Sequence record: LR745208.1
DNA length: 64,000 nucleotides
Strand: one strand, 5' to 3'
Position numbers and translations under genes: made by a program. This document shows positions 17,248 to 63,053 of the stretch, one piece after another (positions within the stretch are counted from its first letter, which is position 1; every line of letters begins with the position of its first letter). The notes beneath the pieces were generated by a model that was not told the origin of the DNA, searched no databases, and was given only the letters and a program-made list of their open reading frames with translations.

Positions 17248-17775
17248 TCAGGAATTTTTGGCCCGCTGGGCAGCGTACCAGCGGTCATTTTCCTCGATGT
17301 ATGCCTTCAGGTCGTCAGGTAGCCGCTGGCCCATCTCATCACACACGGGTCGGCCATCGTGGGCGCGGTGGTACAGGTCCAGCTGTGGAACCTTCCACCC
17401 CGCGGTACGCCAACCTTCAGTGATGGCTCGGTCAAGACCCTCGATGTACGCCTGTTCGGTCAGGTGCCTACACTGGAGTACCTCCCGGACCTGTTCGGGG
17501 GTTAGGGGTCGGGACACACATCCCCCTCCAGGACAGGTGTGTTGGTATCCGTCTGTAGTCTGCACGACTACCTCGGAGACGAAACTGCCCTTGCCCTGCC
17601 AGGGCTGGTTTCGGTCAATCTCAATGCTCTTGACAATGGTGTTGAATGGCCATGTGGTGCACCCGCTGATCAGGTCACCGGGCTTCAGGGCCACGGCCCA
17701 CTTGAGCAGGGCAATGTTGTACTTGTTGAACAGACGGTGGTATCGGAGTCGAGAGATGCCTTTGTAGAGTCTCAT
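17248..17775 (-). CDS. Hypothetical protein
   Basis: ATGA overlap with the ligase stop. Confidence 0.65.
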   Translation of the reverse strand: MRLYKGISRLRYHRLFNKYNIALLKWAVALKPGDLISGCTTWPFNTIVKSIEIDRNQPWQGKGSFVSEVVVQTTDGYQHTCPGGGCVSRPLTPEQVREVLQCRHLTEQAYIEGLDRAITEGWRTAGWKVPQLDLYHRAHDGRPVCDEMGQRLPDDLKAYIEENDRWYAAQRAKNS

Positions 17776-18818
17776 GTCGGATATATCCTCAGGTAGGCCG
17801 GAAATCTTGGAACCCCGTCCTTGGAAAGCTCCTGGTAAGAGATGGTCACTCGGGACCCGATTGAGGGTGGGTTCTCCCGCTCATGGTCTGAGAGCCCAGT
17901 CCCCACGTTGAGGGTAATGCCATTATCCATGACCACATCAAGGGAGCCCACTCGGTCCTTGTGCTTCCCTTTGCCCTTCTTGTAGCCGGTGACGGTTACC
18001 TCACAGTCAAAAAAGTCCTTGACCTTGAGGAGGGTATGGGAACGACCAGCTTCATAGAGGCTCCCTGGCTGCCGGAGCATGATCCCCTCATATCCGTACT
18101 TCGTAGCCAGAGCCAAGTCCCACTCCAAAGCACGTTTGTTGTCCTTGACCGGAGATTGGTCAAGGAGATTGACCAGGGCCCCTTTTCGAGGGACATAGTA
18201 GCCCATGAACTCATCACGAAGAAGTTTGACCATGGCGTCCAAGCGATCCTCAAAGGGCCCTGGGTGATTGGGCATGTCGAAGACCATGAACTGGATTTCT
18301 TCCCACTCGGCGTCTACCGGGGTTCCCTTCCTGACATAGCTCACAGTCTTCTGGAACCTCCCATTTCCAGCGAACAACTCACCATCAAGGACCACCCCTT
18401 TTGGCATCTTGTCCTTGAACCACTGGGGAGCAAAATACTCATTCCCGAGTCGGCTCCAGAAGCGTTCCCCATCCCACCATGCGCGGACCCCATCTAGCTT
18501 GTAGCTGGACCACCATCCAGAGACATCTACATCCCTGTCCCAAGTATGGGCTAAGAGACATGGAGGTACGTTCTTGGGTTTAGTTGGGGTCTTGGGCGCT
18601 GTTCCATTGACCACAGATCCACTCTGGTGGACGCTGGCAGCAGCTCCATTAGAAACGTTGGCTTTTATGTGCTTGCAAATCCGCTGGTCGATGGGTAGGC
18701 TTTGGTTTTTCCAGGCGGGGCATGAGCAGTTCACCACCCCCCCGGAATTCTTCACCACATAGGGTTTCTTGCCAGACCCCTGAACTTCGATGGACTCGCC
18801 TTCGTTGAGGTGGATCAT
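17772..18818 (-). CDS. ATP-dependent DNA ligase with an N-terminal SWIM-like Zn finger
   Basis: CSCPAW...CKHI; motif I YKLDGVRA, LDGELF, FMVFD, EGIMLR, LLKVK; OB domain ending PRFP. Confidence 0.92.
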   Translation of the reverse strand: MIHLNEGESIEVQGSGKKPYVVKNSGGVVNCSCPAWKNQSLPIDQRICKHIKANVSNGAAASVHQSGSVVNGTAPKTPTKPKNVPPCLLAHTWDRDVDVSGWWSSYKLDGVRAWWDGERFWSRLGNEYFAPQWFKDKMPKGVVLDGELFAGNGRFQKTVSYVRKGTPVDAEWEEIQFMVFDMPNHPGPFEDRLDAMVKLLRDEFMGYYVPRKGALVNLLDQSPVKDNKRALEWDLALATKYGYEGIMLRQPGSLYEAGRSHTLLKVKDFFDCEVTVTGYKKGKGKHKDRVGSLDVVMDNGITLNVGTGLSDHERENPPSIGSRVTISYQELSKDGVPRFPAYLRIYPT

Positions 18819-19150
18819 TCTTCCCCCACAGGCTCGCCATTTTCCCACACCAATTCATCCTGCCCCTGCCATGCCTGGACGGGGGTTCCAGGAGGGCAGT
18901 CTACAATGGCAACAATCGTGTATCCTCCCGCTTCGATACGTACGGGCCAAGGAATGGGCACCCCCTCTTTGAGGGGAGACAGCGTGGCCATCCAAACCCC
19001 AAGGTCTGAATAGGCCATACCAACTCTCACACCACCCTCTGGGGTCCCGATTACGAAGTCTGTGGACTCGCGATCATAGGCTAGGATTTCATCCTCATAA
19101 TCGCCCTCGATTTCAACATTGTCATCACTGTAGCCGCTCAGTTTGATCAT
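18815..19150 (-). CDS. Hypothetical protein
   Basis: Overlapping stop and start on both sides. Confidence 0.65.
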   Translation of the reverse strand: MIKLSGYSDDNVEIEGDYEDEILAYDRESTDFVIGTPEGGVRVGMAYSDLGVWMATLSPLKEGVPIPWPVRIEAGGYTIVAIVDCPPGTPVQAWQGQDELVWENGEPVGEE

Positions 19151-28448: not shown

Positions 28449-29324
28449 CTAAGCTCGGAACTTTTCTAGAGATTCCTTGCACAGAGCCTTGAAAAGCTGG
28501 GCTGATTTCTGGCCAATGGCCTTGCGGGCTTCTTTGCTGTCCACAATCTCCCCCTTGGCCTCCCGGATGACATCCTCGATCATGGCCGCGATCACATCCC
28601 CAGTCTTCTCGATCCCAATACCCTGTGGGAGCTTGTCCAGGACATGCTGAAGACGGGTGGGGGTGACCCATTCCTCGGCGATCTCGGTGGCCTTGGTCAG
28701 GACCTCAAGCTGGGAAGGGTCCACAACCTTACGGATTTTGGTGGTTTCCCGCTCGGCATCTCGCTTGTGCTTGGCCATTACCCGCTCGCCATCGTTCAGG
28801 GTCACCTCAACCAGCGGGCGCAGCACTACTCCCTCCCGAGGCTGGTCACCAACGACTCCGTTGCGCCGGGCCTGCTCGGAGGGTGCGTCCCTCTCTGCAT
28901 CGATGGCAGCTAGGTCTGTGGAGATCTTCACATAGTGGACGAACTCCAGGCTCAGCTTCTTGGCCACATCATCCGCGGAGGGGACCGACAACCAGCTGTC
29001 ACCTACCTTGACCTCAAAGGCAATGAACTTGGAGTTCGGCCCATAGCGCCACGATTGTCCCTGTTGGTTGCCCCCGTAGGCTTCCCCAAACACAACCACC
29101 TCCGGATGCCCCATGGCCTCGAAGGCTGCCACCAGAGCCACCTCCTCGAACAGGGAAACGAACTTGTTGTGGGACTCCCCACCTGACGAGAAGTGGAGCT
29201 TCCCTTCCTTCCACGAGATATGTGCTGAAGTTCCATGGATTTTTTCCATGGAATAGCACTCGCGGAACAGCAGGATGGTCTGACCCTCGGGTCGGTATAG
29301 ATTGGTCAAATGCATGTATGACAT
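28449..29324 (-). CDS. RNA ligase (Rnl2-like nucleotidyltransferase)
   Basis: Motif I EKIHG, VFGEAYG, FIAFEVK, EGVVLRP, AKHKR; SD AGGAG. Confidence 0.85.
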   Translation of the reverse strand: MSYMHLTNLYRPEGQTILLFRECYSMEKIHGTSAHISWKEGKLHFSSGGESHNKFVSLFEEVALVAAFEAMGHPEVVVFGEAYGGNQQGQSWRYGPNSKFIAFEVKVGDSWLSVPSADDVAKKLSLEFVHYVKISTDLAAIDAERDAPSEQARRNGVVGDQPREGVVLRPLVEVTLNDGERVMAKHKRDAERETTKIRKVVDPSQLEVLTKATEIAEEWVTPTRLQHVLDKLPQGIGIEKTGDVIAAMIEDVIREAKGEIVDSKEARKAIGQKSAQLFKALCKESLEKFRA

Positions 29325-29814: not shown

Positions 29815-32800
29815 CTAGGATGCCTGCATTTCCCCTAGTTCCACTTCAATCTCGTCGAATTCCAGCTCGGGTTCCTCAACCTTAGGCTCGACCTTGACTC
29901 GAACCCGCTTGGTCTTCTTGGCTGGGGCATCCTCGGAAGCCACACTTACCCTAATCTTCTCAACTGCCTTCTCAACTGCCTTCTCACCCCCGACAGCGGG
30001 CTCATCGGCCATAGCATTGATGGTGGCCAACAGGACACCTGCACGCTTGAACAGGGGGCTGGTGATCAGGTCCAGGGCGTTGTCTCCAAGGTCGGCCATG
30101 CCATCGTCACGCATCACGGAGGCAATGAGGGCCAGTTTGTTGGCAGGCAGGAAGGCGTCCCCAGTGTCCTGATATTGGGACATGGGAAGCATGCCCAGTC
30201 CTGTACCCAGCAGGAGCTTGGTGATTGCGAGTCCGGAGGGGCTGGCCAGGAAGGCCATCGCCTTGCGCTTATTGGCCCCCAGGACCTGTGTCAGGAACTC
30301 CAGTAGCGGGTCTCTGACCGCCTTGGCGAGCTGCCTTGCTGCCACCCTGTTAGCTGCCCTACCGGCTTCAGTCTTGGCCGTCGCCATGACCCGTTGAGTT
30401 TTGGTCTTTTTGGCTACTTGTTGGGCAATCCCTGTGGCAGGCTCACAGGAGGGGTTGGCGGTCCCCATGTACACTTGAGCCTGTTGGATGGCTTTCTTCA
30501 GCTTGGTTTCTGCAAACTCTATTTCATCGGATAGCTGGTCTTCATTGGTCAGACCTTCGTCAGAGATGTCAGACCATTTGAATTCCCCACAAAGATGCTG
30601 GATCCGATCCTTCAATCTGGGAAGGCTACAGGGATCCACACTGTACTTCTCTGTTTCCAGGTCCCACAGTCCATACCAGACATCTCCCGTATCGGTTTTG
30701 ACCGCCTCAACAATCAGGTCATTCTCGGCCAAGAAACCGGTAACCGTCATTTTGAGGCCTTGGCGGATCTCCAGGTCTTCAATTGCCTTATCCAACTCCT
30801 TATCCAAATGTTTCAGATTACTGGGGATCCACTCCACGCCATATTGAGCGTGGAGACATTCCTTCAGGGGTATAAGGTAGGTGGCCCTCTTCGGCGGGAG
30901 TACCCACACTCCGGTATGTGGTTCCCACAGACCTATCAGTGAAACATCATTTTCGTTTTTGTCAGCTCGAATAACAACTTGATGTTCACGGAGGATGTCG
31001 GGCAGGCTCATTATGGAGTCCTGGGAGGCCTTAACAGCCCATTTGCCACCAGCATACCACCTACGTGCCTCATACAACAGGGTTTTTAGGTCTTCTTGGG
31101 AGTTGGCCAGCCCAGTGTAGGGGAGCTGGGCCTGCACCCAGTCAGTAACCTCATTGATGCCGAGAGTGCTGGGGTTACGGAGCCACTGGGTTTGGGCATG
31201 GCCAGATTTGGGGGACCAAACCTGATATTCCCAAATGTTTGCATCGGAAGGAGCCTTTCGTGCCCGAAAGGCATGCCCTTTGGCCAGCATCCGGTCCCGT
31301 AGATTGTCAACCGGGCTTGTGCGGATATAATGTGCGCGGGCTGAGGGTAGACGAGTGAAGCTGTCAATTCGAGTCAGAAGGTCTGCCGGAAGATCCGAGG
31401 CGGTCCCTGCCCAGGACTGCCAAGTTCTGGCACTGAGGTCCCACTCAATTTCCGTAGCATAGTAGGCGTCATTTTTGTCCCCACGGAATTTGGCAATCTC
31501 CTTAGCCAAATTCCTAATAGTCTCCTCAGGAGGGACTTGGCCACGGTCTTGATCTTTTGCAACTCTGGCCTTAGTTCGCTCTTCTGCACAAACCGTGTCC
31601 AGCCTTAGGGACCGATGTTTGGGGATATTCTTGGAAAGCTCCGTCCAAGTTGCCCATGCAGGAGTGGCAATGTAATCCTGGATCAGCTCCAAGTAGTGGC
31701 TCAGTGGAGGCGGGTCCCCTTTGGTCACCAAGGCATCCGCGGTGGAAATCTCTTGGGCAAATGCTTCAATTGTATCGGTAGGGCTCATGGGTGTATTAGT
31801 TACCCCCTTTCCCCTTTCGAGGCGGACAATATCCTGGATCTCCTCCCCATTATCATCCTCAGACAAGGCAAAATGTCGCCCTGGTCTTCCGCGTACATAG
31901 AAGCCACCCTGGCCGTCTTTTATGATTTCCGCCTCCCCTTTGATTAGCCAGTCGAACCATTCCCGCATCCAATCAGAATTAAGGTATGGGTGCTTTTTCT
32001 GTTCCCGTTGGATGTATGCCTCTACATGCGGCCTGTGGGAAGGTGGGCTCATGTGGGTAACCCTTGGCAGTGCCTCCTCCTTGGACCGCGCAATGAAAGC
32101 TTCAGTGCGGGCAATAGCGTCCGCAGGAACATGGTAGTGGGCTCCCATATCCTTGGGGGTTCCGAGAAACGGGGTGGTCTCCTTGATGAGGCCGGAGAGC
32201 CATTGGCCCATCTCCGTCCCACATACGGTTGACCAGTAGTTGCCCATAGATGTTAAGGTGTCTTCTTTTACCGGACCGAGCACCTTGACCCGTTCCTTGG
32301 CAACATAGGTTTCAGTGCGGGTAATCAGATCGTGGGTCACTTCCAAATCGGCCCCCACCTTTTGAATGGCTTTCCCGGCATCGCCCTGGCTCTTGATAAG
32401 ATGACCAACCCAGTTGGTCGACCATTGAAGGATCTCCGCTGAATTCTTTGAGGCATTAAGGATGTCCGAATGATCCCGATAGAACCCCCACAGGGACTTT
32501 TTGATATTAGCTGATTTCTCTTTGAGGGCAGCCCACTCCTTGGCTAGGGACTCCAAGTTATCAGTGACCCTGACACTACCCCACTCAGAAATTCCCATGG
32601 CCCCCGTAGAAGACAATAAGTTCTGTCGTGGAGGTTCAAATCCCACCAGAGCAGCAGCCTGTTGATTCGTTAGAGTCTGAGACGGGGTTTGAGACTGCTT
32701 CCATGTTCCCCATGCCTCAATCTCCGCTTTCACCTCGGCATGGGACATCTGCCGGGGGAACAGGAGGAGCCTGTTTTGTGTTAGGTAAGCTTCCCAGTTC

Positions 32801-33369
32801 CGGAAGGTCTTATCGGATTCGACCGCCCTGAAATCGGTGATGGATTGCGGAATACCTCCCGGGAAAACCCCTTTGAGCAATTTGGTTAGTGTGGCCTCAT
32901 CGGATTGTGCCCAAGAGCCATCGTCAAATCTACTGATCTGATTCCCCAACCATGCCCTGAGAGCTACGAAGTCCACCTTGAAAATGTCCGCCGGGTCCCT
33001 GGTAACTGAGAAGATGATGGTATCCACCGCTAGGACATCCTGGATGAATAATGGCTGGATGAATAGTGGCCCGTGATTGGCCAGCAACTCTGCCAATGAT
33101 GGCAAAGTCTTCACTGTGGCCGGAGCTTTGGAATCATCGGCCCTCTTGAGCACGTGGCACAGAAGAAAACCAGTGTCACCAGAGAAGGCAAAGTCCTCAA
33201 CAGGACCCAGTTGCTCAGTGCTGGCCTCACTAGGTGGGTTGGTTACCACCACTATATCAAAGGGCCCACCAGCATCCAAGGTGTTCTTCAGGCTGTCAAG
33301 TTGCTCGCGCGTGCCTACAACCTTGACCCCCCTGGAGCCATCTCTCAGTTTGGACCATGTAGCATTCAT
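29815..33369 (-). CDS. Giant modular protein A (1184 aa)
   Basis: Internal helical repeats; C-terminal domain paralogous to that of 36076..39837. Confidence 0.85.
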   Translation of the reverse strand: MNATWSKLRDGSRGVKVVGTREQLDSLKNTLDAGGPFDIVVVTNPPSEASTEQLGPVEDFAFSGDTGFLLCHVLKRADDSKAPATVKTLPSLAELLANHGPLFIQPLFIQDVLAVDTIIFSVTRDPADIFKVDFVALRAWLGNQISRFDDGSWAQSDEATLTKLLKGVFPGGIPQSITDFRAVESDKTFRNWEAYLTQNRLLLFPRQMSHAEVKAEIEAWGTWKQSQTPSQTLTNQQAAALVGFEPPRQNLLSSTGAMGISEWGSVRVTDNLESLAKEWAALKEKSANIKKSLWGFYRDHSDILNASKNSAEILQWSTNWVGHLIKSQGDAGKAIQKVGADLEVTHDLITRTETYVAKERVKVLGPVKEDTLTSMGNYWSTVCGTEMGQWLSGLIKETTPFLGTPKDMGAHYHVPADAIARTEAFIARSKEEALPRVTHMSPPSHRPHVEAYIQREQKKHPYLNSDWMREWFDWLIKGEAEIIKDGQGGFYVRGRPGRHFALSEDDNGEEIQDIVRLERGKGVTNTPMSPTDTIEAFAQEISTADALVTKGDPPPLSHYLELIQDYIATPAWATWTELSKNIPKHRSLRLDTVCAEERTKARVAKDQDRGQVPPEETIRNLAKEIAKFRGDKNDAYYATEIEWDLSARTWQSWAGTASDLPADLLTRIDSFTRLPSARAHYIRTSPVDNLRDRMLAKGHAFRARKAPSDANIWEYQVWSPKSGHAQTQWLRNPSTLGINEVTDWVQAQLPYTGLANSQEDLKTLLYEARRWYAGGKWAVKASQDSIMSLPDILREHQVVIRADKNENDVSLIGLWEPHTGVWVLPPKRATYLIPLKECLHAQYGVEWIPSNLKHLDKELDKAIEDLEIRQGLKMTVTGFLAENDLIVEAVKTDTGDVWYGLWDLETEKYSVDPCSLPRLKDRIQHLCGEFKWSDISDEGLTNEDQLSDEIEFAETKLKKAIQQAQVYMGTANPSCEPATGIAQQVAKKTKTQRVMATAKTEAGRAANRVAARQLAKAVRDPLLEFLTQVLGANKRKAMAFLASPSGLAITKLLLGTGLGMLPMSQYQDTGDAFLPANKLALIASVMRDDGMADLGDNALDLITSPLFKRAGVLLATINAMADEPAVGGEKAVEKAVEKIRVSVASEDAPAKKTKRVRVKVEPKVEEPELEFDEIEVELGEMQAS

Positions 33370-33398: not shown

Positions 33399-34289
33399 CT
33401 AGCTTGACACCATCTCGCGCCATCGGGCCTCAATAACTTGGGCGTAACGGGTAAAGGACAGGTTGTAGTTGCCTACCGAGAAGCCGTCGTTGACCTCTAC
33501 GAGGGCATAGGGTCCGTCCTCTATTTGGGCGATGTCCAACCCGTAGGAGATGGGTTGGTTTTTGAAGTCCCGGACCATCTGCTCGGCTACCCGACGGGCT
33601 TGAGTGAACCCCCTACACCCACCCAGACTCGTGGGCAGGATCTTCTTCTTGACCACGTAGATTCGGTGCTCAGGGGATGTGGAGATATCGACCACATCCG
33701 AAACCATCACCGGAAAGTCAGGGGGGAACCCGGTTGTTTCGTGATCATAAGATAGCCCACCCCAGGTGCCATTTCTCGGGTTGTACTTGTTGGGGTCCCA
33801 ATATACAACATGGCCATTGAATGCCTTCTGCCACCGGAGGGGTTTGATGAACAGTGACGTCTTGGTTTCCTCAACTTCCTTTCGGACATCCCCAAGAGTA
33901 GAAGACCAAACCTTACGGTGCCGGTACTTGCGTAGGCTCCATGGAAGGTCCACGTTCTTGGGCTGCCGGACCCCCAGAAGGTCAAGGGCTTTTCGGGTAG
34001 TGCGAATATCTGCCTTCACGATTGTGTGCTTGGAGAGAGGCAGCTCAGGTAGCCTATCGCTGTCAAAGTCAAAGGCACAAACCTCATATCCTAGCCGTCT
34101 AAGCCCTTGGGCAGCGTCTGCACAGTTGTCACTCCACCAGCAGACATCCACAAAGGGGATGTATGCGGGATCCTTCTGGTCTGTATTGTAGTATGGAATC
34201 CTCCCACGCCCTGGAGTCTTGTCGGGCAGGTATGGGAACCCACGTGTTTTGGGAGATGCCCTAACGAAAGCAATTTTCTTGCGGCTCAT
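33399..34289 (-). CDS. ATP-grasp protein (DUF4343/R2K-like)
   Basis: LFIKP, EHRIYV, YGLDI, LVEVNDGFSVGNY. Confidence 0.8.
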   Translation of the reverse strand: MSRKKIAFVRASPKTRGFPYLPDKTPGRGRIPYYNTDQKDPAYIPFVDVCWWSDNCADAAQGLRRLGYEVCAFDFDSDRLPELPLSKHTIVKADIRTTRKALDLLGVRQPKNVDLPWSLRKYRHRKVWSSTLGDVRKEVEETKTSLFIKPLRWQKAFNGHVVYWDPNKYNPRNGTWGGLSYDHETTGFPPDFPVMVSDVVDISTSPEHRIYVVKKKILPTSLGGCRGFTQARRVAEQMVRDFKNQPISYGLDIAQIEDGPYALVEVNDGFSVGNYNLSFTRYAQVIEARWREMVSS

Positions 34290-35900: not shown

Positions 35901-36076
35901 TCATGCTTGTCCAGTTCGATGGCCTCGATCTGGAAGGAAGGTGGCTCCAGACCCCGCATCTCGCTGACCCCAACCAAGGTGACCCACCGGCTATCTGCAA
36001 GTTTGAGTTGCCAGACTCCAGATCGGGTGGGGTGGGGGGTCATGAGAGTGACCTTGTGGGAGGTGAAGTGATCCAT
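35891..36076 (-). CDS. Small hypothetical protein
   Basis: TAATG overlap. Confidence 0.55.
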   Translation of the reverse strand: MDHFTSHKVTLMTPHPTRSGVWQLKLADSRWVTLVGVSEMRGLEPPSFQIEAIELDKHDWE

Positions 36077-39000
36077 TAAGCGTGTGCCCGAGCCCCAGCT
36101 TCGGCGGCCACTTCCTCTTCGCCCTCTTCCGCAGCCCCAGCAACATCCACCCGGACCTTCTCGTCAGCCATGGTGTTGATCGTCGCCAGGAGGCTACCAG
36201 CCTTCTTGAAGAGGGGGCCCGTCAGAAGGTCCATGGCGCCATCCCCAAGGTCCGCAAGGCCATCCTCGCGCATTACAGAGGCTACCTGGGCCAGCCGGTT
36301 GGCAGGGATCAGCTCGTCTTCGTTCTGTTCGTACTTGGACATGGGGAGTGCGCCGAGGCCTGAACCCACCACCAGCTTGGTGATGGCAAGGCCTGTGGGA
36401 GAAGCCAGGAACTTCGTGGCCTTACGCTTGTCGGCCCCCAGGCTCTGGACCAAGAACTCCAGGAGGGGGTCTCGGACGGCCTTGGCAAGCTGGCGGGCGG
36501 CAGTCTTGGTAGCGGCGCTTCCAAGCTCGGCCTTGAACGTGTTTGCAACTTTTCGGGTCTTGGTTGTCGGCATCTTCTTCTCGGTGTTCGTGGGCATGTT
36601 GTGGGGCTCAATTGTTTCGGGAGGCTTGTTGGTACTTACACCCGTCTCCGGGCTGCTCGTGAGGGATTCGGTGAACGCGTAAGGCCCCCAGACATTGTTC
36701 CGCTCCTGGGTGATGAACTGATCCAATTCTGTCTTCAGGGCGGGGGTGAGGTTGTCCGACCAGACAATATGGGAGGGGATGACCCTCTGGATATTGTCAC
36801 GTATGGTACGGGCGAATGACTCAACCGGGGCAGTTGGAACTGTTGAGGGTAGGTCAGATATCTTCCTACGGCTCGCGGCTGCCAGGGAGATGATCCGGTG
36901 CTCCCGTTCTGTGAAGGCTTGGAGCCTCTTGGAAAGCTCTACAGGAAGGGTTCCCCAGTCCGTTCGGTCCCTGTCTTTCTGGATGTTCTCAAGGATCTCA
37001 TCCTTGGCAAGTTCCACGGAGAAGGGGGACGCATATCCCTTGGCTTTGACCATCTCATTGGCCAAAGATTCCACCGTGTCAAAAATGACTCCCGTGGCGA
37101 ATATGGGGGAGGCTGCCCTGGGAAAACTTGTGACACCCTTCCAAACCTTGTCCCGCTCTAGGGTGATGAACTGATCCAATTTTGTCTTCAGATCAGCAGG
37201 TAAGTAGTAGGACCAATCCAGAGGGGTGGGGTGGCAGGCTTGGATGTTGGCCAGTATGGCTGCACCGTATCCAAACTCTCTAAGTGGAGATGCCCACCCC
37301 TGCGTTGTCCGCCACTTAACGATCTCCTCATCCAAGGCCCCGATTGCCCAGGCAAGATCCAGGAAATTGCCCAGCCGAACAGATAGATCCTTAGGCAGGA
37401 ATGCCCACTTGGGGTTTACCTTGACGCCTGTAATGTCCTCCAAGATCAATGTCTTGGCAGTCTCTACGGGGGTGCTCAAGTACTTGGAGGCTTCATTGGC
37501 CAGTGACTCCACTGTATCGAAGGCCACAGCATTGGGCTTGGTTTCAGCAACCCCCATTGAATGCGTAGAGGCAATTGAGGATGCCTTCCCTATAGCCTTC
37601 TTAACCCGCTCGTTGTAGATGAGACCTTCGACCCTGGAGTTGAGTTCAGCTCCCAAATCAGTCCGCGACACTGCCCAAGTTACTGGTTCAGTAGGGTCAT
37701 CAATGTAATCTTGAAGGAGCTCCTCATAGGTTTTGCTGTCTGTCTGCACTTGACCCTTGAGGCTCCCATTGGCACTGGCTACGGCGATCTCCTTGGCCAG
37801 AGACTTTACGGTATCCGTGTCTTTGGGGACCGTGTAATGGAGCCTCTTCCGGAGTACCTCATTAACCGTTGCTTGAATCTTCTCGTGGGCGGCTGGGGTG
37901 TAGGTAAAGTTGAATTGGATGTCCTTGAGCGCCTCCTTCATATGCTGCTGGATGTGGTCAGCCAGGGTATCACGGGCTGTTTGAGCAATGTGGTTTTGAG
38001 TCTTCTGAGGCTCCCACGGCGTGCCTGGATCCAAGAAAATCTGCAACCTATGGAGCACCTCCCTCTGGCCCTCTCCATCTCCTTTGAGGACGACTTGGGT
38101 TTCGGTACCCGCCTCGTTTTCGGTCTGGGACCATTGGGCTATATGTACCCCAGCAAGGCTTTCCTGGGTAGGTGTCTTCACACCGTTTGTCACTGCCCAC
38201 TCCAGGAGTCCAGGTGTCGCGAGTAGTACCTGCTGCACCTCTTGGGGGGATGTGCCTCCCTCATGTGGGCCGATATAGTCAATAATGTATTGGGTCAAGT
38301 CTCCGTGAAAACAGCCAGCATGCTCCCCGTTTTTGATGTCCGCAGCAATAGCGCGAATGTACTGGTGCCGTAGGTTCGCAACTTCCTTGGCTTCCGTTAC
38401 TTCGGCTTGAGTGGGTTCCTTATCCGCTTCTTTGTCTGGTTCCTTCTTGCCCACAGAATGGAGTTCTTCCAAGTAGTCAGACTGCATGCCCTTGATGGTA
38501 TCGATGTGAATAGGGTCCCCGACCATCTTCTGGAGAATCTGGTTGGGGCTGTCCCCCTTGTTTTTGTCCCTGGCTGCCGCCATCCGCTTATTGACATAGA
38601 CTTCTGGAGAGATGCCATGGAGGTCCCACAAGGCCCGGTCTAGTGCCTCCCGCTCTGCATTACTGGCTTCGTAATTGGCGCGAAGGTGGATGTACCGCTG
38701 GAGGGCAGGGACGTAGTCTTTGCTGATGCTAGCTTCCCAAAGATAGGGTTTCTTCGGCTCCATGCCCAGAAGGGTATAACCATTGGAAATAGCGGTACTT
38801 CCTATTGTAAAGGTGGTGGTGCTATCAGTTACGAGCGTATCAGACATGGGTGTGTCTTCTTTCTTGGGGCCCACCAGATAAGGTAGGATTTCCGCTTCCG
38901 TCCAAAGGGAGTCAGAGGTATTGTAGGTGTCCCAACAAATTCGGTAGCGTGATTTGCTATTACGGGCATAACCAGTCACAGTACCCTGAATGGTAGCAAA

Positions 39001-39837
39001 CGACACCCGCCGTCCAATTAGACTGGACTGAACAGCCCCTTCCTTCACTGGCCCCAGGAAAGGCAACAAGTCGGAATCCAACCACGTGGATTTTGGGGAA
39101 TGGGCTGTCGCGGCGTCGTAGATCTTCGCCCCAGTATCCAGGGACTTCCAATCAACATCCAATACAAAAGGGCCCCCAGTATGTCCCGGGTAGGGTCTGG
39201 CAGCCGTGACAGTCCCAGACCATCCAAACCACTGTACAGACATCCCAATGAAGTCTGTGACTTTAGACGGTATGCCTTTGGCATCTTCTTTTTCCAACAG
39301 GTCGACTTTTTTCTTGTAGTCTGATACGGAGGACACCACCCGGGATTCAGGCTTGGTAACCTTGGCCTTTGCAAGAGACAGATCTGGGTCTCCAACCTGG
39401 GTGTCATCGTCAGAGAGCGGATGCCATGGGAGTTCCGCGACGAAGTCCTTTGCCCCAGCGGGCATCGACTCTACTGGCACCAGGGCCTTGGCCAAATCTG
39501 TCATATGTAACACTGTGGACCTAGCCCCAGACGTGAGGATGAACTCACCGGGCCACTTCCCTGTTTCCACTTGGGCATTCCAAACGAACTGTTCCCCCGG
39601 GAGTTTGGGTAGGGTCCGGTACTCACTGGTCCTGGATTTCTCCATGATGAGCCCTTGGGGGGGCATTGTCTGTGGGGTCTGTAGGGGGACCCAAGGTTGA
39701 CCTATCTTGTGCTCTGGGTCTGCGGGGTGCCCATCAAATGAGAAGGTTTTGACCTGTCCAAAATGGGCACAGCCAGGGGGCATATCTACCCCACTAACCG
39801 CCCCACATACGGAACATGTGATATCATCGAGACTCAC
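36076..39837 (-). CDS. Giant modular protein B (1253 aa)
   Basis: Several DTVESLA(N/K)E repeats; shared C-terminal domain; acidic tail. Confidence 0.85.
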   Translation of the reverse strand: MSLDDITCSVCGAVSGVDMPPGCAHFGQVKTFSFDGHPADPEHKIGQPWVPLQTPQTMPPQGLIMEKSRTSEYRTLPKLPGEQFVWNAQVETGKWPGEFILTSGARSTVLHMTDLAKALVPVESMPAGAKDFVAELPWHPLSDDDTQVGDPDLSLAKAKVTKPESRVVSSVSDYKKKVDLLEKEDAKGIPSKVTDFIGMSVQWFGWSGTVTAARPYPGHTGGPFVLDVDWKSLDTGAKIYDAATAHSPKSTWLDSDLLPFLGPVKEGAVQSSLIGRRVSFATIQGTVTGYARNSKSRYRICWDTYNTSDSLWTEAEILPYLVGPKKEDTPMSDTLVTDSTTTFTIGSTAISNGYTLLGMEPKKPYLWEASISKDYVPALQRYIHLRANYEASNAEREALDRALWDLHGISPEVYVNKRMAAARDKNKGDSPNQILQKMVGDPIHIDTIKGMQSDYLEELHSVGKKEPDKEADKEPTQAEVTEAKEVANLRHQYIRAIAADIKNGEHAGCFHGDLTQYIIDYIGPHEGGTSPQEVQQVLLATPGLLEWAVTNGVKTPTQESLAGVHIAQWSQTENEAGTETQVVLKGDGEGQREVLHRLQIFLDPGTPWEPQKTQNHIAQTARDTLADHIQQHMKEALKDIQFNFTYTPAAHEKIQATVNEVLRKRLHYTVPKDTDTVKSLAKEIAVASANGSLKGQVQTDSKTYEELLQDYIDDPTEPVTWAVSRTDLGAELNSRVEGLIYNERVKKAIGKASSIASTHSMGVAETKPNAVAFDTVESLANEASKYLSTPVETAKTLILEDITGVKVNPKWAFLPKDLSVRLGNFLDLAWAIGALDEEIVKWRTTQGWASPLREFGYGAAILANIQACHPTPLDWSYYLPADLKTKLDQFITLERDKVWKGVTSFPRAASPIFATGVIFDTVESLANEMVKAKGYASPFSVELAKDEILENIQKDRDRTDWGTLPVELSKRLQAFTEREHRIISLAAASRRKISDLPSTVPTAPVESFARTIRDNIQRVIPSHIVWSDNLTPALKTELDQFITQERNNVWGPYAFTESLTSSPETGVSTNKPPETIEPHNMPTNTEKKMPTTKTRKVANTFKAELGSAATKTAARQLAKAVRDPLLEFLVQSLGADKRKATKFLASPTGLAITKLVVGSGLGALPMSKYEQNEDELIPANRLAQVASVMREDGLADLGDGAMDLLTGPLFKKAGSLLATINTMADEKVRVDVAGAAEEGEEEVAAEAGARAHA

Positions 39838-40599: not shown

Positions 40600-41109
40600 T
40601 CACGCCGCCTTCAGGAATTCTTGGAACTTGTCCCACACGTTCACGATGGGTTTGCCCACCCGCTCAGTGTACCGGACACAATTGAATGTCCCGCCCCGGG
40701 TTCCGTCCCACAAGGCCAACATGGTATCACACCGGTCGGCCATCCAGACGTTACGCTTTTGGAGCTTCTCTGCCCCATACCCGGGCTCCGACACATACAC
40801 GATCCTGGTAGCCTTTGCAAGCAATTCGTGATAGTGGACCTGCGATTGCGCGGGCCACATTGATTCCTGGCCCAAGAAAGGTACGGCTGCGATGAGGGGG
40901 AGACCCAGGTCAAGAGCGGCTTCCGCTATGGCTTGGTCCCACCCCAAGGCCATTCCACTAATGACGTGGGTGGTCTCGGGGATCTGTCGGAGGCATTGGG
41001 TGGCAAATCTCCGAAGGCGGAGAGCAACCTCTAGGCTGTACCCACCGATTTTTTCCGGCCTATGACCCGTTGCAGCTACCAGGAAGTAGCCAGGATGGTT
41101 GTTGGCCAA
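40600..41109 (-). CDS. YspA-like SLOG family protein
   Basis: ATGHRP, ISGMALGWDQ, KRNVWMAD, ALWDG..GGT.NCV. Confidence 0.85.
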   Translation of the reverse strand: MANNHPGYFLVAATGHRPEKIGGYSLEVALRLRRFATQCLRQIPETTHVISGMALGWDQAIAEAALDLGLPLIAAVPFLGQESMWPAQSQVHYHELLAKATRIVYVSEPGYGAEKLQKRNVWMADRCDTMLALWDGTRGGTFNCVRYTERVGKPIVNVWDKFQEFLKAA

Positions 41110-41112
41110 GGG

Positions 41113-41832
41113 TCACCCCCCGGTCTGACTACGGGGCAGTGTTTTGAACCGGGCCACCCCGAAGTTGCCCTGTAACTCCACCGTGTCATCCGCCTCAATG
41201 TTCCTGGTCCCATTGGGCAGTTGCTGAATGAGCTTGTGGGTCTCAGGGGTCTTGTTGGCGAGGGTCAGAAGCTGTCTCCCCGTCATGGTCACCGGATGCG
41301 GAAGAACCTCTGAGTACATGTTCTTATCGAGCTTGATGGATGCTCGCACCATGACTGGCGGAGACACAGACGCCTTGGCTGCCCGCGTCAGGTCATCCAT
41401 GGTGGGGATTCCTGGGAGGAAGGGGAGGAAGGGTTCCGCGATACTTGCTGCCGTTGGGGCCTTGGCCACAGGGGGCTTGACTGGGGTGCCCTGTTGGGAC
41501 TGGTCCAGCATTCCATCCAAACGTTTCAGGGTGTTTTGAAGCCTGAGGATGAGGTCAAACATCCGAAACCCCGACTGAGACCAGTTGTGGAGGTCCGTTA
41601 GGTCCCGGAGGACCCGACGCTGCCACGCAATCTTCCTGTGAAGGACAGCGTAGCAGGTACCCGCATTGTTGGTCAGGGCCTCCTGTAGCATGTCTCTTTC
41701 GGCGGTAACCGCTTGAAGGCTGTTCTTCAGGTTCTGGTTCTCCTGGTAGAGGGAGTTCCGTTCGCGTTCGAGCTTCAAGGTCTGGGCCTCTTGCTCATCG
41801 TTATTTCCAAACCATCCAAACAGTGGCTTCAT
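41113..41832 (-). CDS. Coiled-coil protein with a C-terminal multiubiquitin-type Ubl domain ending in GG
   Basis: IKLDK...MTGRQLLTLA...HKLIQ...NIEADDTVEL...RFKTLPRSQTGG*. Confidence 0.7.
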   Translation of the reverse strand: MKPLFGWFGNNDEQEAQTLKLERERNSLYQENQNLKNSLQAVTAERDMLQEALTNNAGTCYAVLHRKIAWQRRVLRDLTDLHNWSQSGFRMFDLILRLQNTLKRLDGMLDQSQQGTPVKPPVAKAPTAASIAEPFLPFLPGIPTMDDLTRAAKASVSPPVMVRASIKLDKNMYSEVLPHPVTMTGRQLLTLANKTPETHKLIQQLPNGTRNIEADDTVELQGNFGVARFKTLPRSQTGG

Positions 41833-41835
41833 GGT

Positions 41836-42672
41836 CTACTTCTCCTCGGTAAGATTCAGGGCCATTGCCCGGTACAGGTCTTCAGGGGGAATACACGACA
41901 GCCCACTCATCTGGCCATCGTTCAACTCAATCACAATCCACCGACCATCCATGGTCTTGGCCACATCCACCACCACAAACGTTACATGGTCCTTGACCCG
42001 GTTCCCTACCTGAAGCAGGAACTCCTGGGGGACCTCCGATGCCTTGGGGTCAATACCCACCGCGTTCAGGTCCTCCAGATAGTTGGACCAGTAGTAGCCA
42101 CCTACAAGGGGCTTCCCCCGCAGGAAGAAGAACCGGAACTCTCGGGTGATGGGTTGCTTGTTGATGGGGTCCACCAGAAACGTCTCAAGCTCTACGAATT
42201 GACGGACGTATATCTGCTGTTGCCCAATGAGCCCATCCGCCATGAGCACTTGGGCCACCTCAATGGCTTCGGTCTTGTTGCGCGCGAAACAATGGGTAGA
42301 CCATTTGTCTTTTCTGGAATTGGTTTCCCCCTTGACTACAAACGGGCCCCCAGAGTCAGGAACATCTGATAGTTGGGTCCACGTCTTAGGGGTCAACTCA
42401 TCCAGGATACCCACGTAGTTCTGTAGGTCCGCCACGAACCTGTGCTCCCGGTGGCTGTTGATAAGGGTGGAGCCAGCGTCTCTCAGATCCTCCTCCAGTT
42501 CCTTGTAGAAGGGGAGGACTGAATAGCGCCCAACCACGGTAGCCTTATGAGGCACCTGGGATCGTCTGGTAACTACCTTGAAGTATCGGTTGGCTGCCTC
42601 TTCCTCCCCTTCGGATTCCCCTACACAACCAGGACGGAACAAAATGACTGGAGGCATGGGAGGGGACATCAA
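41836..42672 (-). CDS. ATP-grasp protein (R2K-like)
   Basis: FVVKG, EFRFF, VVVDVA, IELNDGQMSG. Confidence 0.8.
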   Translation of the reverse strand: MMSPPMPPVILFRPGCVGESEGEEEAANRYFKVVTRRSQVPHKATVVGRYSVLPFYKELEEDLRDAGSTLINSHREHRFVADLQNYVGILDELTPKTWTQLSDVPDSGGPFVVKGETNSRKDKWSTHCFARNKTEAIEVAQVLMADGLIGQQQIYVRQFVELETFLVDPINKQPITREFRFFFLRGKPLVGGYYWSNYLEDLNAVGIDPKASEVPQEFLLQVGNRVKDHVTFVVVDVAKTMDGRWIVIELNDGQMSGLSCIPPEDLYRAMALNLTEEK

Positions 42673-61108: not shown

Positions 61109-62113
61109 ATGCGTGACACACGTCCCGTCGAAGTCATCGTCAAGCAGAACCAAGAGATCCGGGATGCCCGTGTGGCTCTTGGGCTGTCCTCGAAGTGTCA
61201 TGAGTGGCGGGAACCCAAGGAGCCAGGACACCGGTACAGCCATGACCGGGGGCCTCAGTACTACCTGAACCACGTCCTGTTCATGAACAGGTTCTTCACG
61301 CTGCTGTTTCTGGACGGGGCATACCCGAACGGTGTCTATCAGCTTCTGTGGGTCGACAAGAATGGCCCCCATCTGAAGGAAAACGATGCCAGGAAGTCTG
61401 TCTGGCGCAGCATGGATGACTCGGGCCTTGGTGTAATCCATGAAATCCTCATGGATTACACCAGGGTTGATATCTGGCCTGTCTACCCTGATGTGGCACG
61501 AGAACCCCGCCGAGACCCGGTGGACCCCCACAATTGGGAAGTCATTCACAACGAGGAGAATCCAAAAGCATGGTGGGGCAGAGCTTGTGGGGCATATGAC
61601 CAGGGGTACCCATTTCGGGCCCAAAACGGGTTTGAGGAATTCTTATTCCACTGTGACCGAGAGCCCAAGGCTGCCTTCAACCTTGGCCGGATTGCGGAGC
61701 AACAGAACCGGATTGAGGAAGCGGGGGTCTGGTACCGTTGTGCACTCTCAATCCAGCCCAATTATCCCAGGGCCACGGATGCCCTAGCTGCCCTTAAGAA
61801 GCTGTGGGTGGCCCCTGTGATTTCCATTCGCAGGCAGGAACCCCAACCGCTTAACACTGGGCTGTCGATGATGGATGTCCTCAGGATTTGTGGCGCCCCC
61901 AAAGAGTACCTCACCAGGGGGCACACGGCTTTTCTATCCAAGGAAGCAGTCAAGAGGATGGGTGATAACACTCAAGGGCTCACCCGGGATTCCACCAACA
62001 TCTCTGACATGTACAGGTATGATGGGCAGGCATTGAACATCGCTGAGAACATAGTCTTGGGGTGGCTTCAGTGGAAAAGAGCTGGTTTGATGGGTGTCCC
62101 GGCAGTCCGGTAG
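61109..62113 (+). CDS. Hypothetical protein with TPR-like repeat
   Basis: AAFNLGRIAE...AGVWYRCALSIQPNYPRA. Confidence 0.7.
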   Translation: MRDTRPVEVIVKQNQEIRDARVALGLSSKCHEWREPKEPGHRYSHDRGPQYYLNHVLFMNRFFTLLFLDGAYPNGVYQLLWVDKNGPHLKENDARKSVWRSMDDSGLGVIHEILMDYTRVDIWPVYPDVAREPRRDPVDPHNWEVIHNEENPKAWWGRACGAYDQGYPFRAQNGFEEFLFHCDREPKAAFNLGRIAEQQNRIEEAGVWYRCALSIQPNYPRATDALAALKKLWVAPVISIRRQEPQPLNTGLSMMDVLRICGAPKEYLTRGHTAFLSKEAVKRMGDNTQGLTRDSTNISDMYRYDGQALNIAENIVLGWLQWKRAGLMGVPAVR

Positions 62114-62126
62114 AGTAACTGCACCA

Positions 62127-63053
62127 ATGCTCAAACCCCCCTTCAAATGGCCCGGCGGCAAACGCCGCATGCTCCCTCAAATTCTGCCTCTCCTTCCCGA
62201 ATCCTACGGCACGTATATTGAGCCCTTCTTGGGCGGAGGGGCAGTCCTGCTGGCCTTGTTGCCCCCAAGGGCACTGGTAGGGGACTTCAACCCCAAGCTC
62301 ATCGAGGTTTTCGAGGCCCTCCGGGATGAATGTGAGGATGTCATCCAACTAGTCGGGTCTCTGACTACCAAGACAGCCCCAGGAGGGGAGTGCCTGAGCG
62401 AGGAGGAGTTCCTGAGCCTTGCTACGGAAGCTAGTGCTGACTTGGCTGTTGGGGAAGCGGACTACTACAGAGTCCGAGCGGATATGCCAACGACTAGGGC
62501 GGGCAGGGCAGCTAGATTCATCTACCTTAATCAGCATGGTTTCAACGGGCTCAATAGGGAAAATTCCAAAGGTGAGTTCAATGTCCCTTTTGGGCATCGA
62601 CTAAATGTTGCCTTGGATGTGGACAACCTTCGCAAGGTTGCAAAGTACCTTGGGTCTGGGCAGGTCAAGTTGACCTGTCAGGATTGGAAGGTTTTGACCG
62701 GGCTGGCCCAACCAGGGGACCTAGTATTTATGGATCCCCCCTATTTTGAGGGGTTCACGGATTATTGTGCTGGGGGTTTTGAGGGCAGGGACTTGGATGT
62801 CCTCTACCGAGAAGTCCATCGGCTCCACGAGCAGGGGATTCATGTGATCCTGACCAACTCCCATTGTCAAGAGGTCCTGGACCGATTTCAAGAATTCACC
62901 CTCATACCTGTTGGGGGGAGCTACAGAATCGGAGGGGGTCATGGGCGCAAGAACAAGAAAATGGAGGTCATCATCTCCAACTTGGCTCCCGAGCCACCAC
63001 CTCAAGGGGCACTGGACTTCTTCAGCCTGGGGAAAAATCACGAGGAGCCATAG
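62127..63053 (+). CDS. dam: Dam-family DNA adenine methyltransferase
   Basis: FKWPGGKR, YIEPFLGGG, FIYLNQHGFNGL, DPPY. Confidence 0.9.
   Translation: MLKPPFKWPGGKRRMLPQILPLLPESYGTYIEPFLGGGAVLLALLPPRALVGDFNPKLIEVFEALRDECEDVIQLVGSLTTKTAPGGECLSEEEFLSLATEASADLAVGEADYYRVRADMPTTRAGRAARFIYLNQHGFNGLNRENSKGEFNVPFGHRLNVALDVDNLRKVAKYLGSGQVKLTCQDWKVLTGLAQPGDLVFMDPPYFEGFTDYCAGGFEGRDLDVLYREVHRLHEQGIHVILTNSHCQEVLDRFQEFTLIPVGGSYRIGGGHGRKNKKMEVIISNLAPEPPPQGALDFFSLGKNHEEP

What the first reader, a model, noticed from the sequence alone, without database searches (positions are those of the whole stretch)
41113..41832. Phage protein ending in a conjugatable ubiquitin-like domain (...QTGG)
The last 75 or so residues match the multiubiquitin/beta-grasp pattern of bacterial E1-E2-JAB operons and end in a free di-glycine. 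The N-terminal part is a long coiled coil. No E1, E2 or JAB gene is present in the window. Established: bacterial Bil-type systems conjugate Ubls to phage proteins to block virion function. Inference: a decoy Ubl that occupies host E1/E2, or a tag the phage attaches using host enzymes.
Basis: partly seen in the sequence, partly recalled or inferred. Interest (0 to 1): 0.7.

Follow-up and report, generated by a model that had tools for sequence, protein, structure and literature searches.

The report
Orphan bacterial-type ubiquitin-like protein in phage
A 485-kb groundwater phage carries a lone copy of the ubiquitin-like tag that bacterial 'Bub' conjugation operons use, ending in the family's reactive glycine but with none of the enzymes needed to attach it, so it most likely mimics the host's tag; that mechanism is untested.

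Summary
Window 41113..41832 (-) encodes a 239-aa protein with three parts:
- an N-terminal helical, coiled-coil-like region (residues 11-113);
- a disordered Pro/Ala linker;
- a C-terminal beta-grasp domain (161-233) matching Pfam Multi_ubiq above its cut-off and solved bacterial multi-ubiquitin/BubA structures at 1.6-2.6 Å.

The last glycine aligns with the invariant terminal Gly of 33 cellular relatives. The di-glycine itself is not conserved: the penultimate residue is E/D in all 33.

The relatives are Bub-type (6E/DUF6527), not classic Bil. Almost all sit beside Prok-E2_E, JAB-ThiF E1 and DUF6527 genes.

The phage (LR745208.1) has no detectable E1, E2, JAB or DUF6527 gene in its whole genome. 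No other phage record or viral contig searched carries such a Ubl, and the N-terminal half has no homologue.

The adjacent R2K.3 ATP-grasp and SLOG genes are not conserved partners.

Best reading (confidence about 0.4): a captured BubA mimic that engages host Bub E1/E2 as a competitor or is hijacked as a tag. A non-conjugated beta-grasp module or a drifting remnant remain live alternatives. The coiled-coil plus single beta-grasp architecture is already known in bacteria.

New variant of a known kind; interest about 0.55.

The parts
41113..41832 (-). Whole ORF: 239-aa coiled-coil plus single beta-grasp ubiquitin-like protein (CC-Ubl1 architecture), stop codon TGA at 41113-41115
41842..41847 (-). 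GAGGAG Shine-Dalgarno-like motif 9 nt upstream of the ATG, lying inside the end of the preceding ATP-grasp gene
   Evidence: sequence read
41494..41802 (-). N-terminal helical, coiled-coil-like region, residues 11-113 (helices 11-55, 61-85, 91-113). No homologue found anywhere
   Evidence: Weak coiled-coil-type hits
41353..41493 (-). Pro/Ala-rich linker, residues 114-160. Residues 120-140 have pLDDT below 50. A short helix at 145-153 leads into the domain
41134..41352 (-). Beta-grasp (Multi_ubiq/BubA-type) domain, residues 161-233
41116..41133 (-). C-terminal tail RSQTGG, residues 234-239. G239 aligns with the invariant terminal Gly after which BubA is exposed and adenylated. G238 replaces the family's E/D
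   Evidence: PMC11601596 read
41836..42672 (-). Context: upstream neighbour, ATP-grasp of the R2K clade (PF14243 R2K_3, 2.9e-21), 3 nt from the Ubl start. Not a conserved partner
40600..41109 (-). Context: downstream neighbour, SLOG-fold protein (YpsA 1.4e-9, DprA-like 3.3e-9, PADLOC ShosA 1.4e-9), 3 nt after the Ubl stop. Not a conserved partner
33399..34289 (-). Context: second R2K-clade ATP-grasp (PF18299 R2K_2, 2.8e-22). In a related viral contig the R2K.3 and R2K.2 genes are separated by only one gene

Best explanation
Identity (well supported): the gene is a phage-borne, orphan member of the bacterial Multi_ubiq/BubA ubiquitin-like family. It is most simply explained as captured from a Type I Bub (6E/DUF6527) operon and now joined to a lineage-specific helical N-terminal half. 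The result is the 'coiled-coil + one beta-grasp' (CC-Ubl1) architecture already described for a few bacterial BubA/BilA proteins.

Mechanism (inferred, not shown):
- The phage encodes no E1, E2 or peptidase of its own.
- It keeps the beta-grasp, a tail of the same length as in cellular BubA, and the terminal Gly that Bub E1 (BubCD) adenylates.
- The protein therefore most likely acts on the host's Bub-type machinery as a molecular mimic of the host Ubl.

Preferred version: a competitor or decoy. It occupies the E1 (a homodimer, which a dimeric coiled-coil Ubl could bind bivalently) and the E2. It then either gets conjugated in place of the host Ubl or stalls the enzymes, blunting whatever the Bub pathway does during infection.

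Less likely version of the same idea: the phage uses the host enzymes to attach its own coiled-coil tag to host or phage proteins.
For: Family membership:
- Pfam Multi_ubiq above the gathering score.
- All 12 significant HMMER hits in 1.84e9 proteins fall on the C-terminal domain only, and the eleven retrieved are BubA-like.
- The profile matches solved BilA/BubA multi-ubiquitin structures.
- The AF2 beta-grasp superposes on them at 1.6-2.6 Å, including BubA in complex with its E1.

The reactive end is kept: the terminal Gly is invariant over 34 sequences, the tail has identical length, and all 7 invariant columns are retained. BubCD cleaves after this Gly and positions it for adenylation (PMC11601596).

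Cellular relatives are embedded in Bub operons: 33 E2, 34 JAB-E1 and 33 DUF6527 hits among 35 loci.

The phage copy is an orphan:
- Profile HMMs of those three enzymes find nothing in any of 5,098 six-frame ORF segments of the 485-kb genome; best E-values are 1 to 3.4.
- A Pfam scan of 450 further ORFs shows no ThiF, UQ_con, Prok-E2, JAB or DUF6527 among the listed families.

The architecture has precedent in real conjugation Ubls: 3 Bub and 5 Type II Bil Ubls have N-terminal coiled coils, and one forms a homodimer (PMC11601603).

The neighbourhood is compatible with host manipulation: two R2K ATP-grasps predicted to modify host proteins (PMC4431377, PMC7824862), and a SLOG protein with ShosA-like similarity.
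Against: - No experiment or complex model tests binding or charging.
- The host is unknown, so it is not known to carry a Bub operon.
- Bub operons had no demonstrated anti-phage phenotype in the describing preprint.
- The gene is a singleton. There is no orthologue in any other phage record, IMG/VR contig or protein cluster. All contigs compared carry identical DNA. Selection on the tail therefore cannot be assessed.
- The phage copy keeps only 16 of 28 columns that are at least 85% conserved in cellular BubA. It has lost the invariant Tyr of RYRIRID (A164), the invariant Glu of ERF (A227) and the acidic penultimate residue (G238). That could mean loss of E1/E2 recognition.
- The GGG GGG codons overlap a possible ribosome-binding site for the next gene, which could explain the second Gly without any role in conjugation.
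Confidence: 0.4

Rival explanations
1. A non-conjugated beta-grasp module. The captured Ubl domain now serves only as a protein-protein interaction or scaffold domain on a phage coiled-coil protein, for example in assembly, localisation or as an adaptor. The terminal Gly is an inherited leftover with no chemistry.
For: - Loss of family-invariant residues Y164, E227 and the acidic penultimate residue; only 16 of 28 conserved columns are kept.
- No cognate enzymes in the genome.
- Beta-grasp domains are widely used as non-conjugated binding modules; the Foldseek list beyond rank 9 is Ras-binding, FERM and UBX domains.
- The second Gly can be explained by overlap with a ribosome-binding site.
Against: - At about 38% identity the ORF still stops exactly at the family's reactive Gly, with an unchanged tail length, and keeps all 7 invariant columns.
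- A flexible tail has no structural reason to be preserved.
- The CC-Ubl1 architecture occurs in bona fide conjugation operons.
Confidence: 0.3
2. A decaying remnant. The gene is a recently captured or formerly operonic bubA whose partner genes were lost. It is drifting and has no function.
For: - Singleton distribution with no orthologues.
- Several family-invariant residues are lost.
Against: - The 239-codon ORF is intact in a tightly packed same-strand block, with a GAGGAG motif 9 nt upstream.
- The beta-grasp is modelled confidently.
- Divergence to about 38% identity without any stop or frameshift argues against neutral decay.
- No E1/E2/DUF6527 remnants were found in any frame.
Confidence: 0.12
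3. E1-independent ligation by the neighbouring ATP-grasp. The R2K.3 ATP-grasp encoded 3 nt upstream activates the Ubl's C-terminal carboxylate as an acyl-phosphate and ligates it to amines on target proteins. This would be a phage-autonomous ubiquitin-like tagging system.
For: - The two genes are immediately adjacent on the same strand.
- R2K-clade enzymes were predicted to be ATP-dependent protein-peptide ligases acting in phage-host conflict (PMC4431377).
- ATP-grasp chemistry acts on carboxylates (established knowledge).
Against: - The linkage is not conserved. Four viral loci with R2K.3 homologues (39-50% identity) contain no Ubl-like ORF.
- In one of them R2K.3 and R2K.2 are one gene apart, so the Ubl looks inserted into an older R2K module.
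- None of 35 cellular BubA loci contains an R2K ATP-grasp within 8 kb.
- 3-nt gene spacing is common in this genome: 5 cases in the window.
Confidence: 0.05
4. A phage-carried piece of a defence or superinfection-exclusion system. It works with host-encoded Bub enzymes against competing phages, rather than against the host system.
For: - Bub operons tend to lie on mobile elements and defence loci (PMC11601596).
- The phage copy retains the reactive end.
Against: - No phage-borne E1/E2.
- A lone Ubl would depend wholly on the host's enzymes.
- No precedent was found in the library searches.
Confidence: 0.08

Closest known systems
BubA, the ubiquitin-like protein of Type I/II Bub (6E/DUF6527) operons (Pfam Multi_ubiq PF14452; Ye et al. 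and Gong et al., bioRxiv 2024, PMC11601596 and PMC11601603)
   Same: - Beta-grasp fold and sequence family.
- Tail of equal length ending in the invariant Gly.
- 31-43% identity to 33 cellular members.
- The coiled-coil plus single beta-grasp architecture exists among bacterial BubA/BilA.
   Different: - Encoded by a phage.
- No E2 (Prok-E2_E), JAB-E1 or DUF6527 gene beside it or anywhere in the genome.
- The penultimate residue is Gly instead of Glu/Asp.
- The invariant Tyr (RYRIRID) and Glu (ERF) are lost.
- The N-terminal half has no homologue.
BilA of Bil (bacterial ISG15-like) anti-phage systems (Hör et al. 2024; Chambers et al. 2024)
   Same: A ubiquitin-like protein with a reactive C-terminal Gly used in phage-bacterium conflict. 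Some Type II BilA proteins belong to the multi-ubiquitin structural group and some have N-terminal coiled coils.
   Different: - Every close relative recovered here lies in a Bub-type operon, not a Bil operon.
- Type I BilA has two beta-grasp domains.
- Bil works through thioesters, Bub through oxyesters.
[quoted passage not shown]
   Same: A phage-encoded ubiquitin-like beta-grasp domain with a conserved glycine at the end of the domain.
   Different: - TAPI is ThiS/MoaD-like and carries a C-terminal extra domain.
- It sits in the tail gene cluster next to a JAB/NlpC peptidase (TAPK) and TAPJ.
- Here the domain is Multi_ubiq-type and C-terminal, with no JAB gene and no tail genes adjacent.
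Virus-encoded ubiquitin homologues of eukaryotic viruses (for example baculovirus v-ubi)
   Same: A virus carries its own copy of the host's conjugatable tag without the full enzyme cascade. These are the top, non-significant BFVD hits.
   Different: They are eukaryotic ubiquitin proper, closely similar to host ubiquitin and used by the eukaryotic cascade. The match here is at fold level only (best E 3e-3, rmsd 16 Å over the whole model).

Membership tests
Multi_ubiq / BubA-type ubiquitin-like proteins | Sequence match to PF14452 above the curated gathering score | tested here: met
   30.4 bits against a cut-off of 24.5, E 4.6e-7, residues 182-233. The alignment profile matches solved multi-ubiquitin proteins at 1.4e-14 to 0.015.
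Multi_ubiq / BubA-type ubiquitin-like proteins | Beta-grasp fold | tested here: met
   AF2 model with strands 161-233 at pLDDT mostly 84-97. Foldseek's top nine PDB hits are bacterial multi-ubiquitin/BubA, rmsd 1.6-2.6 Å.
Multi_ubiq / BubA-type ubiquitin-like proteins | Conserved glycine at the C-terminal end of the last beta-grasp domain, exposed either as the natural end or after cleavage | tested here: met
   G239 is an invariant column in 34 sequences and is followed directly by the stop codon. Its role is described in PMC11601596.
Multi_ubiq / BubA-type ubiquitin-like proteins | Subfamily-invariant residues (Tyr of RYRIRID, Glu of ERF, acidic penultimate residue) | tested here: not met
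   A164, A227 and G238 in the phage against Y, E and E/D in 33 of 33 cellular relatives. Overall 16 of 28 conserved columns are kept.
Bub operon (system-level membership) | Ubl encoded with Prok-E2_E (BubB), JAB-ThiF E1 (BubCD) or E2-E1 (BubBD), and DUF6527 protease (BubE) | tested here: not met
   Profile HMMs built from 33-34 operon proteins give no hit in the whole 485-kb genome; best E-values are 1 to 3.4. No such family appears among the listed Pfam families for 450 ORFs (each list is truncated at 25 families, so weak hits could be hidden).
Bub operon (system-level membership) | ATP-dependent adenylation and oxyester transfer of the Ubl by E1/E2 | not testable with these tools
   Needs biochemistry or at least a modelled complex. 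The structure tool takes single chains only.
Bil (BilA) systems | Ubl in an operon with BilB (E2), BilC (JAB) and BilD (E1) | tested here: not met
   No ThiF-like or JAB-like ORF was detected in the genome. The closest relatives are in Bub-type, not Bil-type, operons.
Lambda-type tail assembly protein I (TAPI) Ubl | ThiS/MoaD-like Ubl at the N-terminus, TAPI-C domain, flanked by TAPK (JAB/NlpC) and TAPJ | tested here: not met
   No Lambda_tail_I or ThiS hit at E up to 1. The Ubl is C-terminal. The neighbours are an ATP-grasp and a SLOG protein.
R2K ATP-grasp plus substrate module (considered as a possible partner system) | Recurrent gene linkage between R2K.3 and a Ubl | tested here: not met
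   Four viral loci with R2K.3 homologues lack any Ubl. 35 BubA loci lack any R2K gene.

The most novel reading that the evidence does not exclude
The Ubl and the ATP-grasp encoded 3 nt upstream form a phage-autonomous tagging system. The R2K.3 ATP-grasp would activate the terminal Gly carboxylate as an acyl-phosphate and ligate the coiled-coil Ubl to host or phage proteins without any E1/E2. That would be a new chemistry for ubiquitin-like conjugation.

The evidence does not exclude this for this one phage. It does show that the linkage is not conserved: the R2K genes occur without a Ubl in relatives, and BubA loci occur without R2K genes.
Probability: 0.05. Interest if true: 0.9.

Novelty: new variant of a known kind. 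Interest (0 to 1): 0.55.

Why it matters
Bacterial ubiquitin-like conjugation (Bil, Bub, CBASS Cap2) is a recently opened field. For Bub, the describing preprint reported no biological role and no phage phenotype.

A phage that carries only the tag of such a pathway, with the reactive end intact, would matter in two ways:
- It would be the first candidate viral mimic of a bacterial Ubl.
- It would be circumstantial evidence that Bub pathways act in phage-host conflict.

It also offers a concrete reagent. One can ask whether a Bub E1/E2 charges it, whether it competes with the cognate Ubl, and whether a Gly-Gly instead of Glu-Gly tail changes charging or removal.

The value is limited because this is a single gene in one uncultivated phage with an unknown host, and because the architecture itself is already known in bacteria.

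Tried and rejected
Searches for relatives:
- Full-length homologues: the word-indexed search of 5.8e9 proteins found only the protein itself. IMG/VR found only the same genome. Full HMMER found no hit to residues 1-129.
- Other phage-borne BubA-like Ubls: tblastn of the target and of a cellular BubA against 50,697 phage records found only this phage. An IMG/VR pattern scan with a BubA alignment found none. BFVD fold search had nothing with E at or below 0.001.

Searches for partner enzymes:
- A phage-encoded cascade elsewhere in the genome: rejected by HMMs of Bub E2, JAB-E1 and DUF6527 and by Pfam scans.
- Regex screens for JAMM and HPN motifs were too unspecific to use.

Gene-neighbourhood hypotheses:
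- ATP-grasp as a conserved partner: rejected as a conserved linkage.
- SLOG protein as a conserved partner: absent from the 35 Bub loci.
- Operon boundaries: promoter and terminator consensus scans were at or below shuffle expectation.

Coding and population checks:
- Stop-codon recoding or read-through into the in-frame SLOG gene: all three stop codons are used normally (31 TGA, 27 TAG, 21 TAA). The 'stop + 1 codon + start' spacing occurs 5 times in the window, so it is not special.
- Population variation as a test of selection: the ten contigs compared are identical in DNA over the gene and its upstream flank. The one apparent downstream variant (L058) is a run of N in a scaffold; it was not filled.

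Technical and literature dead ends:
- The first attempt to scan genome contigs with alignment A1 failed for lack of a conserved stretch.
- A literature search for the accession, and for phage-encoded BubA/BilA mimics, found nothing relevant.

Full report
**What is in the sequence**

The minus strand of window 41113..41832 carries a 239-codon ORF that starts with ATG and ends ...LPRSQTGG followed by TGA. A GAGGAG motif lies 9 nt upstream of the ATG. The ORF sits in a long, tightly packed minus-strand block of genes. The window contains no N.

The window is identical to part of GenBank LR745208.1, an unannotated 485,034-bp 'uncultured phage' genome; window base 1 is about record base 62001. The same protein is found on 24 contigs, and several sample records are labelled groundwater metagenome.

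**Checking the observation**

- Pfam Multi_ubiq (PF14452) matches residues 182-233 at 30.4 bits, above the 24.5-bit curated cut-off.
- A filter-free HMMER scan of 1.84 billion representative proteins returned 12 non-self hits. All fall on residues 130-239 only, and the eleven retrieved and read are BubA-like proteins with the motifs RYRIRID, MTGR..L.LAGK.P and ERF.T.P...TEG.
- I aligned the protein with 33 cellular relatives fetched from genomes. Seven columns are invariant, including the last residue, G239. The tail between the last strand and that glycine has the same length in all sequences.
- AlphaFold2 on that alignment gave three helices (11-55, pLDDT 92-96; 61-85; 91-113), a disordered Pro/Ala linker (120-140, pLDDT below 50) and a beta-grasp at 161-233 with pLDDT mostly 84-97.
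- Foldseek's nine best PDB matches are all bacterial multi-ubiquitin/BubA structures, at rmsd 1.6-2.6 Å over about 75 columns. One is Citrobacter BubA(155-229) bound to its E1, BubCD. The sequence profile finds the same entries.

So the beta-grasp, the family assignment and the reactive-end glycine are real.

- Only the final Gly is a family feature. The penultimate residue is Glu or Asp in 33 of 33 cellular relatives and Gly only in the phage.
- A GG end alone is not rare: 6 of 475 ORFs of this genome end in GG. Only this one follows a Ubl domain.

**Which system the domain belongs to**

In two loci checked with Pfam, the Ubl is followed by Prok-E2_E, then a Prok-JAB + ThiF fusion, then DUF6527. 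In some loci the Ubl is fused to the E2. Across the 35 loci there are 33 E2, 34 JAB-E1 and 33 DUF6527 homologues. The best HMMER hit is likewise a Ubl-E2 fusion sitting next to a JAB-ThiF gene.

This is the Type I Bub ('bacterial ubiquitination-like', formerly 6E/DUF6527) operon of Ye et al. (PMC11601596):
- BubCD cleaves after the conserved Gly and positions it for adenylation.
- Transfer runs through Tyr and Ser oxyesters.
- BubE (DUF6527) is a serine protease.

The same preprint states that no Bub operon had yet been shown to protect against phage, although genomic context suggests immunity or stress response.

The coiled-coil plus single beta-grasp architecture is also not new. Gong et al. 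(PMC11601603) list three such Ubls in Bub operons and five in Type II Bil operons, one of which forms a homodimer.

**Is it an orphan?**

I fetched the rest of the phage genome in pieces. None of the pieces contains N.

I translated all 5,098 stop-to-stop segments of at least 50 aa in six frames. I searched them with profile HMMs built from the operon proteins of the 35 cellular loci.
- There is no hit to the JAB-E1 (best E = 1), to DUF6527 (1.8) or to the E2 (3.4). The only E2-model match is the Ubl itself, which enters that model through Ubl-E2 fusions.
- There is no second Ubl.

A Pfam scan of 450 further ORFs of at least 100 aa in three batches listed no ThiF, UQ_con, Prok-E2, JAB or DUF6527. 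Those lists show only the top 25 of 29, 36 and 44 families found. A weak JAB or E2 match could therefore be hidden; a ThiF domain, which usually scores strongly, probably could not.

The Ubl is also unique among viruses searched:
- tblastn of the protein and of a cellular BubA against 50,697 phage records finds only this record.
- IMG/VR scans find only this genome.
- BFVD has no significant structural match.

The N-terminal 129 residues have no homologue anywhere.

**Neighbours**

- Upstream, 3 nt away, is an R2K-clade ATP-grasp (PF14243, 2.9e-21).
- Downstream, 3 nt away, is a SLOG-fold protein (YpsA 1.4e-9, DprA-like 3.3e-9). It also matches the PADLOC model for ShosA, a DprA-like component of the ShosTA system (role from my own knowledge, not checked here), at 1.4e-9. 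That score is no better than its generic SLOG matches.
- A second R2K ATP-grasp (R2K_2, 2.8e-22) lies at 33399..34289.

Burroughs et al. predicted R2K.2 and R2K.3 enzymes to be protein-peptide ligases used in phage-host conflict, and noted that the two genes are often linked (PMC4431377). I tested whether the ATP-grasp is the Ubl's partner.
- Four viral contigs with R2K.3 homologues (39-50% identity) contain no Ubl-like ORF.
- In one of them, R2K.3 and an R2K.2 homologue (30% identity, 6e-26) are separated by a single gene. In this phage the Ubl, the SLOG gene and a 1,253-aa ORF therefore look inserted into an older R2K pair.
- None of the 35 cellular BubA loci has an R2K or SLOG gene within 8 kb.
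- Three-nucleotide spacing is common here, with 5 cases in the window. All three stop codons are in normal use. The in-frame 'stop + one codon + start' arrangement of the three genes is therefore not evidence for read-through.
- Promoter and terminator scans were uninformative.

**Interpretation**

The identity is secure. This is a phage-borne, orphan BubA-type Ubl with a lineage-specific helical N-terminal half.

The mechanism is inference. The phage keeps the beta-grasp, the tail length and the reactive Gly, and it lacks every enzyme that could use them. The simplest functional reading is that the protein meets the host's Bub-type E1/E2 as a mimic of the host Ubl. I prefer a competitor or decoy role. 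BubCD is a homodimer (heading of section 7 in the outline of PMC11601596), so a dimeric coiled-coil Ubl could bind it bivalently. Hijacking as a phage tag is the less likely variant.

Points against this reading:
- The gene is a singleton in a clonal population: the ten contigs compared are identical in DNA. No selection test is possible.
- The host is unknown.
- The phage copy keeps only 16 of 28 columns that are at least 85% conserved in cellular BubA. It has lost the invariant Tyr, the Glu of ERF and the acidic penultimate residue.
- The GGG GGG codons lie 4-9 nt upstream of the next gene's TTG start. They could be kept as a ribosome-binding site.

Rivals and my confidence in each:
- a non-conjugated beta-grasp module, 0.30;
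- a drifting remnant, 0.12;
- a phage-carried exclusion component, 0.08;
- ATP-grasp-driven, E1-independent ligation, 0.05.

**Comparison with known systems and novelty**

The closest family is BubA/Multi_ubiq. Fold, Pfam score and terminal Gly are met. The operon context and some invariant residues are not.
- It is not BilA in the strict sense.
- It is not the ThiS/MoaD-like TAPI Ubl of lambdoid phages, which sits with a JAB/NlpC peptidase in tail clusters (PMC1779556).
- Virus-encoded ubiquitin of eukaryotic viruses is an analogy only.

I found no report of a phage-encoded BubA/BilA mimic in the held library. One 2026 preprint mentions in passing a phage E1-like structural match.

I rate the finding a new variant of a known kind, with interest 0.55. 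It is a clean, testable lead on a young question, namely what Bub pathways do and whether phages counter them. It rests on one gene in one uncultivated phage, and nothing yet supports the mechanism.

Noticed in passing
window 33399..34289 (-) and 41836..42672 (-): Two ATP-grasp genes of the R2K clade (R2K_2 and R2K_3) lie 7.5 kb apart. In a related viral contig (L004 4989..5825 and 6605..7372) the homologues are separated by one homing-endonuclease-like gene and lie directly after an intein-containing terminase-like ORF. This phage therefore seems to have acquired inserts between them.
   Followed up: partly
window 40600..41109 (-): The SLOG-fold protein next to the Ubl matches the PADLOC model for ShosA at 1.4e-9. 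That is about as strong as its YpsA and DprA Pfam matches. It could be a second mimic of a host defence component or simply a generic SLOG or ssDNA-binding protein.
   Followed up: partly
window 41107..41121 and 41830..41838: The ATP-grasp, Ubl and SLOG ORFs are all in one reading frame, each separated by a stop plus one codon (TAG ACC ATG; TGA CCC TTG). The GGG GGG codons of the terminal Gly-Gly lie 4-9 nt upstream of the SLOG TTG start and may double as its ribosome-binding site.
   Followed up: partly
window 36076..39837 (-) and 29815..33369 (-): Two very large ORFs (1,253 and 1,184 aa) in the same minus-strand block have no Pfam match at all.
   Followed up: no
window 28449..29324 (-), 17772..18848 (-), 62094..63053 (+): An RNA ligase (PF09414, 1.1e-11), an ATP-dependent DNA ligase (OB domain 8.3e-25) and a D12-class adenine methyltransferase (4.6e-38) are encoded in the window.
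   Followed up: no
LR745208.1 outside the window (loci L008-L017): The rest of the genome encodes an unusual set of families: Volactin-like actin (PF25216, 1.6e-68), eukaryotic-type topoisomerase I, a caspase domain, Cpn60, RtcB, Thg1, PTH2, RF-1, NAD synthase, a protein kinase, PP2C, Macro, NUDIX, ADP-ribosylglycohydrolase (5e-65) and an ART-PolyVal ADP-ribosyltransferase. Gene positions were not resolved because the batch scan reports families only.
   Followed up: no
LR745208.1 record 72..1532 (+) and 460776..462230 (-), and others: There are at least six IS605 OrfB/TnpB-like (Cas12f1-like TNB) ORFs. Two of them, in opposite orientation near the two ends of the record, share an identical 19-residue stretch.
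   Followed up: no
L058 about 3883..3925: One scaffold of the same phage from another assembly has a run of N inside the SLOG gene, which made the gene caller split it. This is an assembly gap, not a variant. It was not filled.
   Followed up: yes
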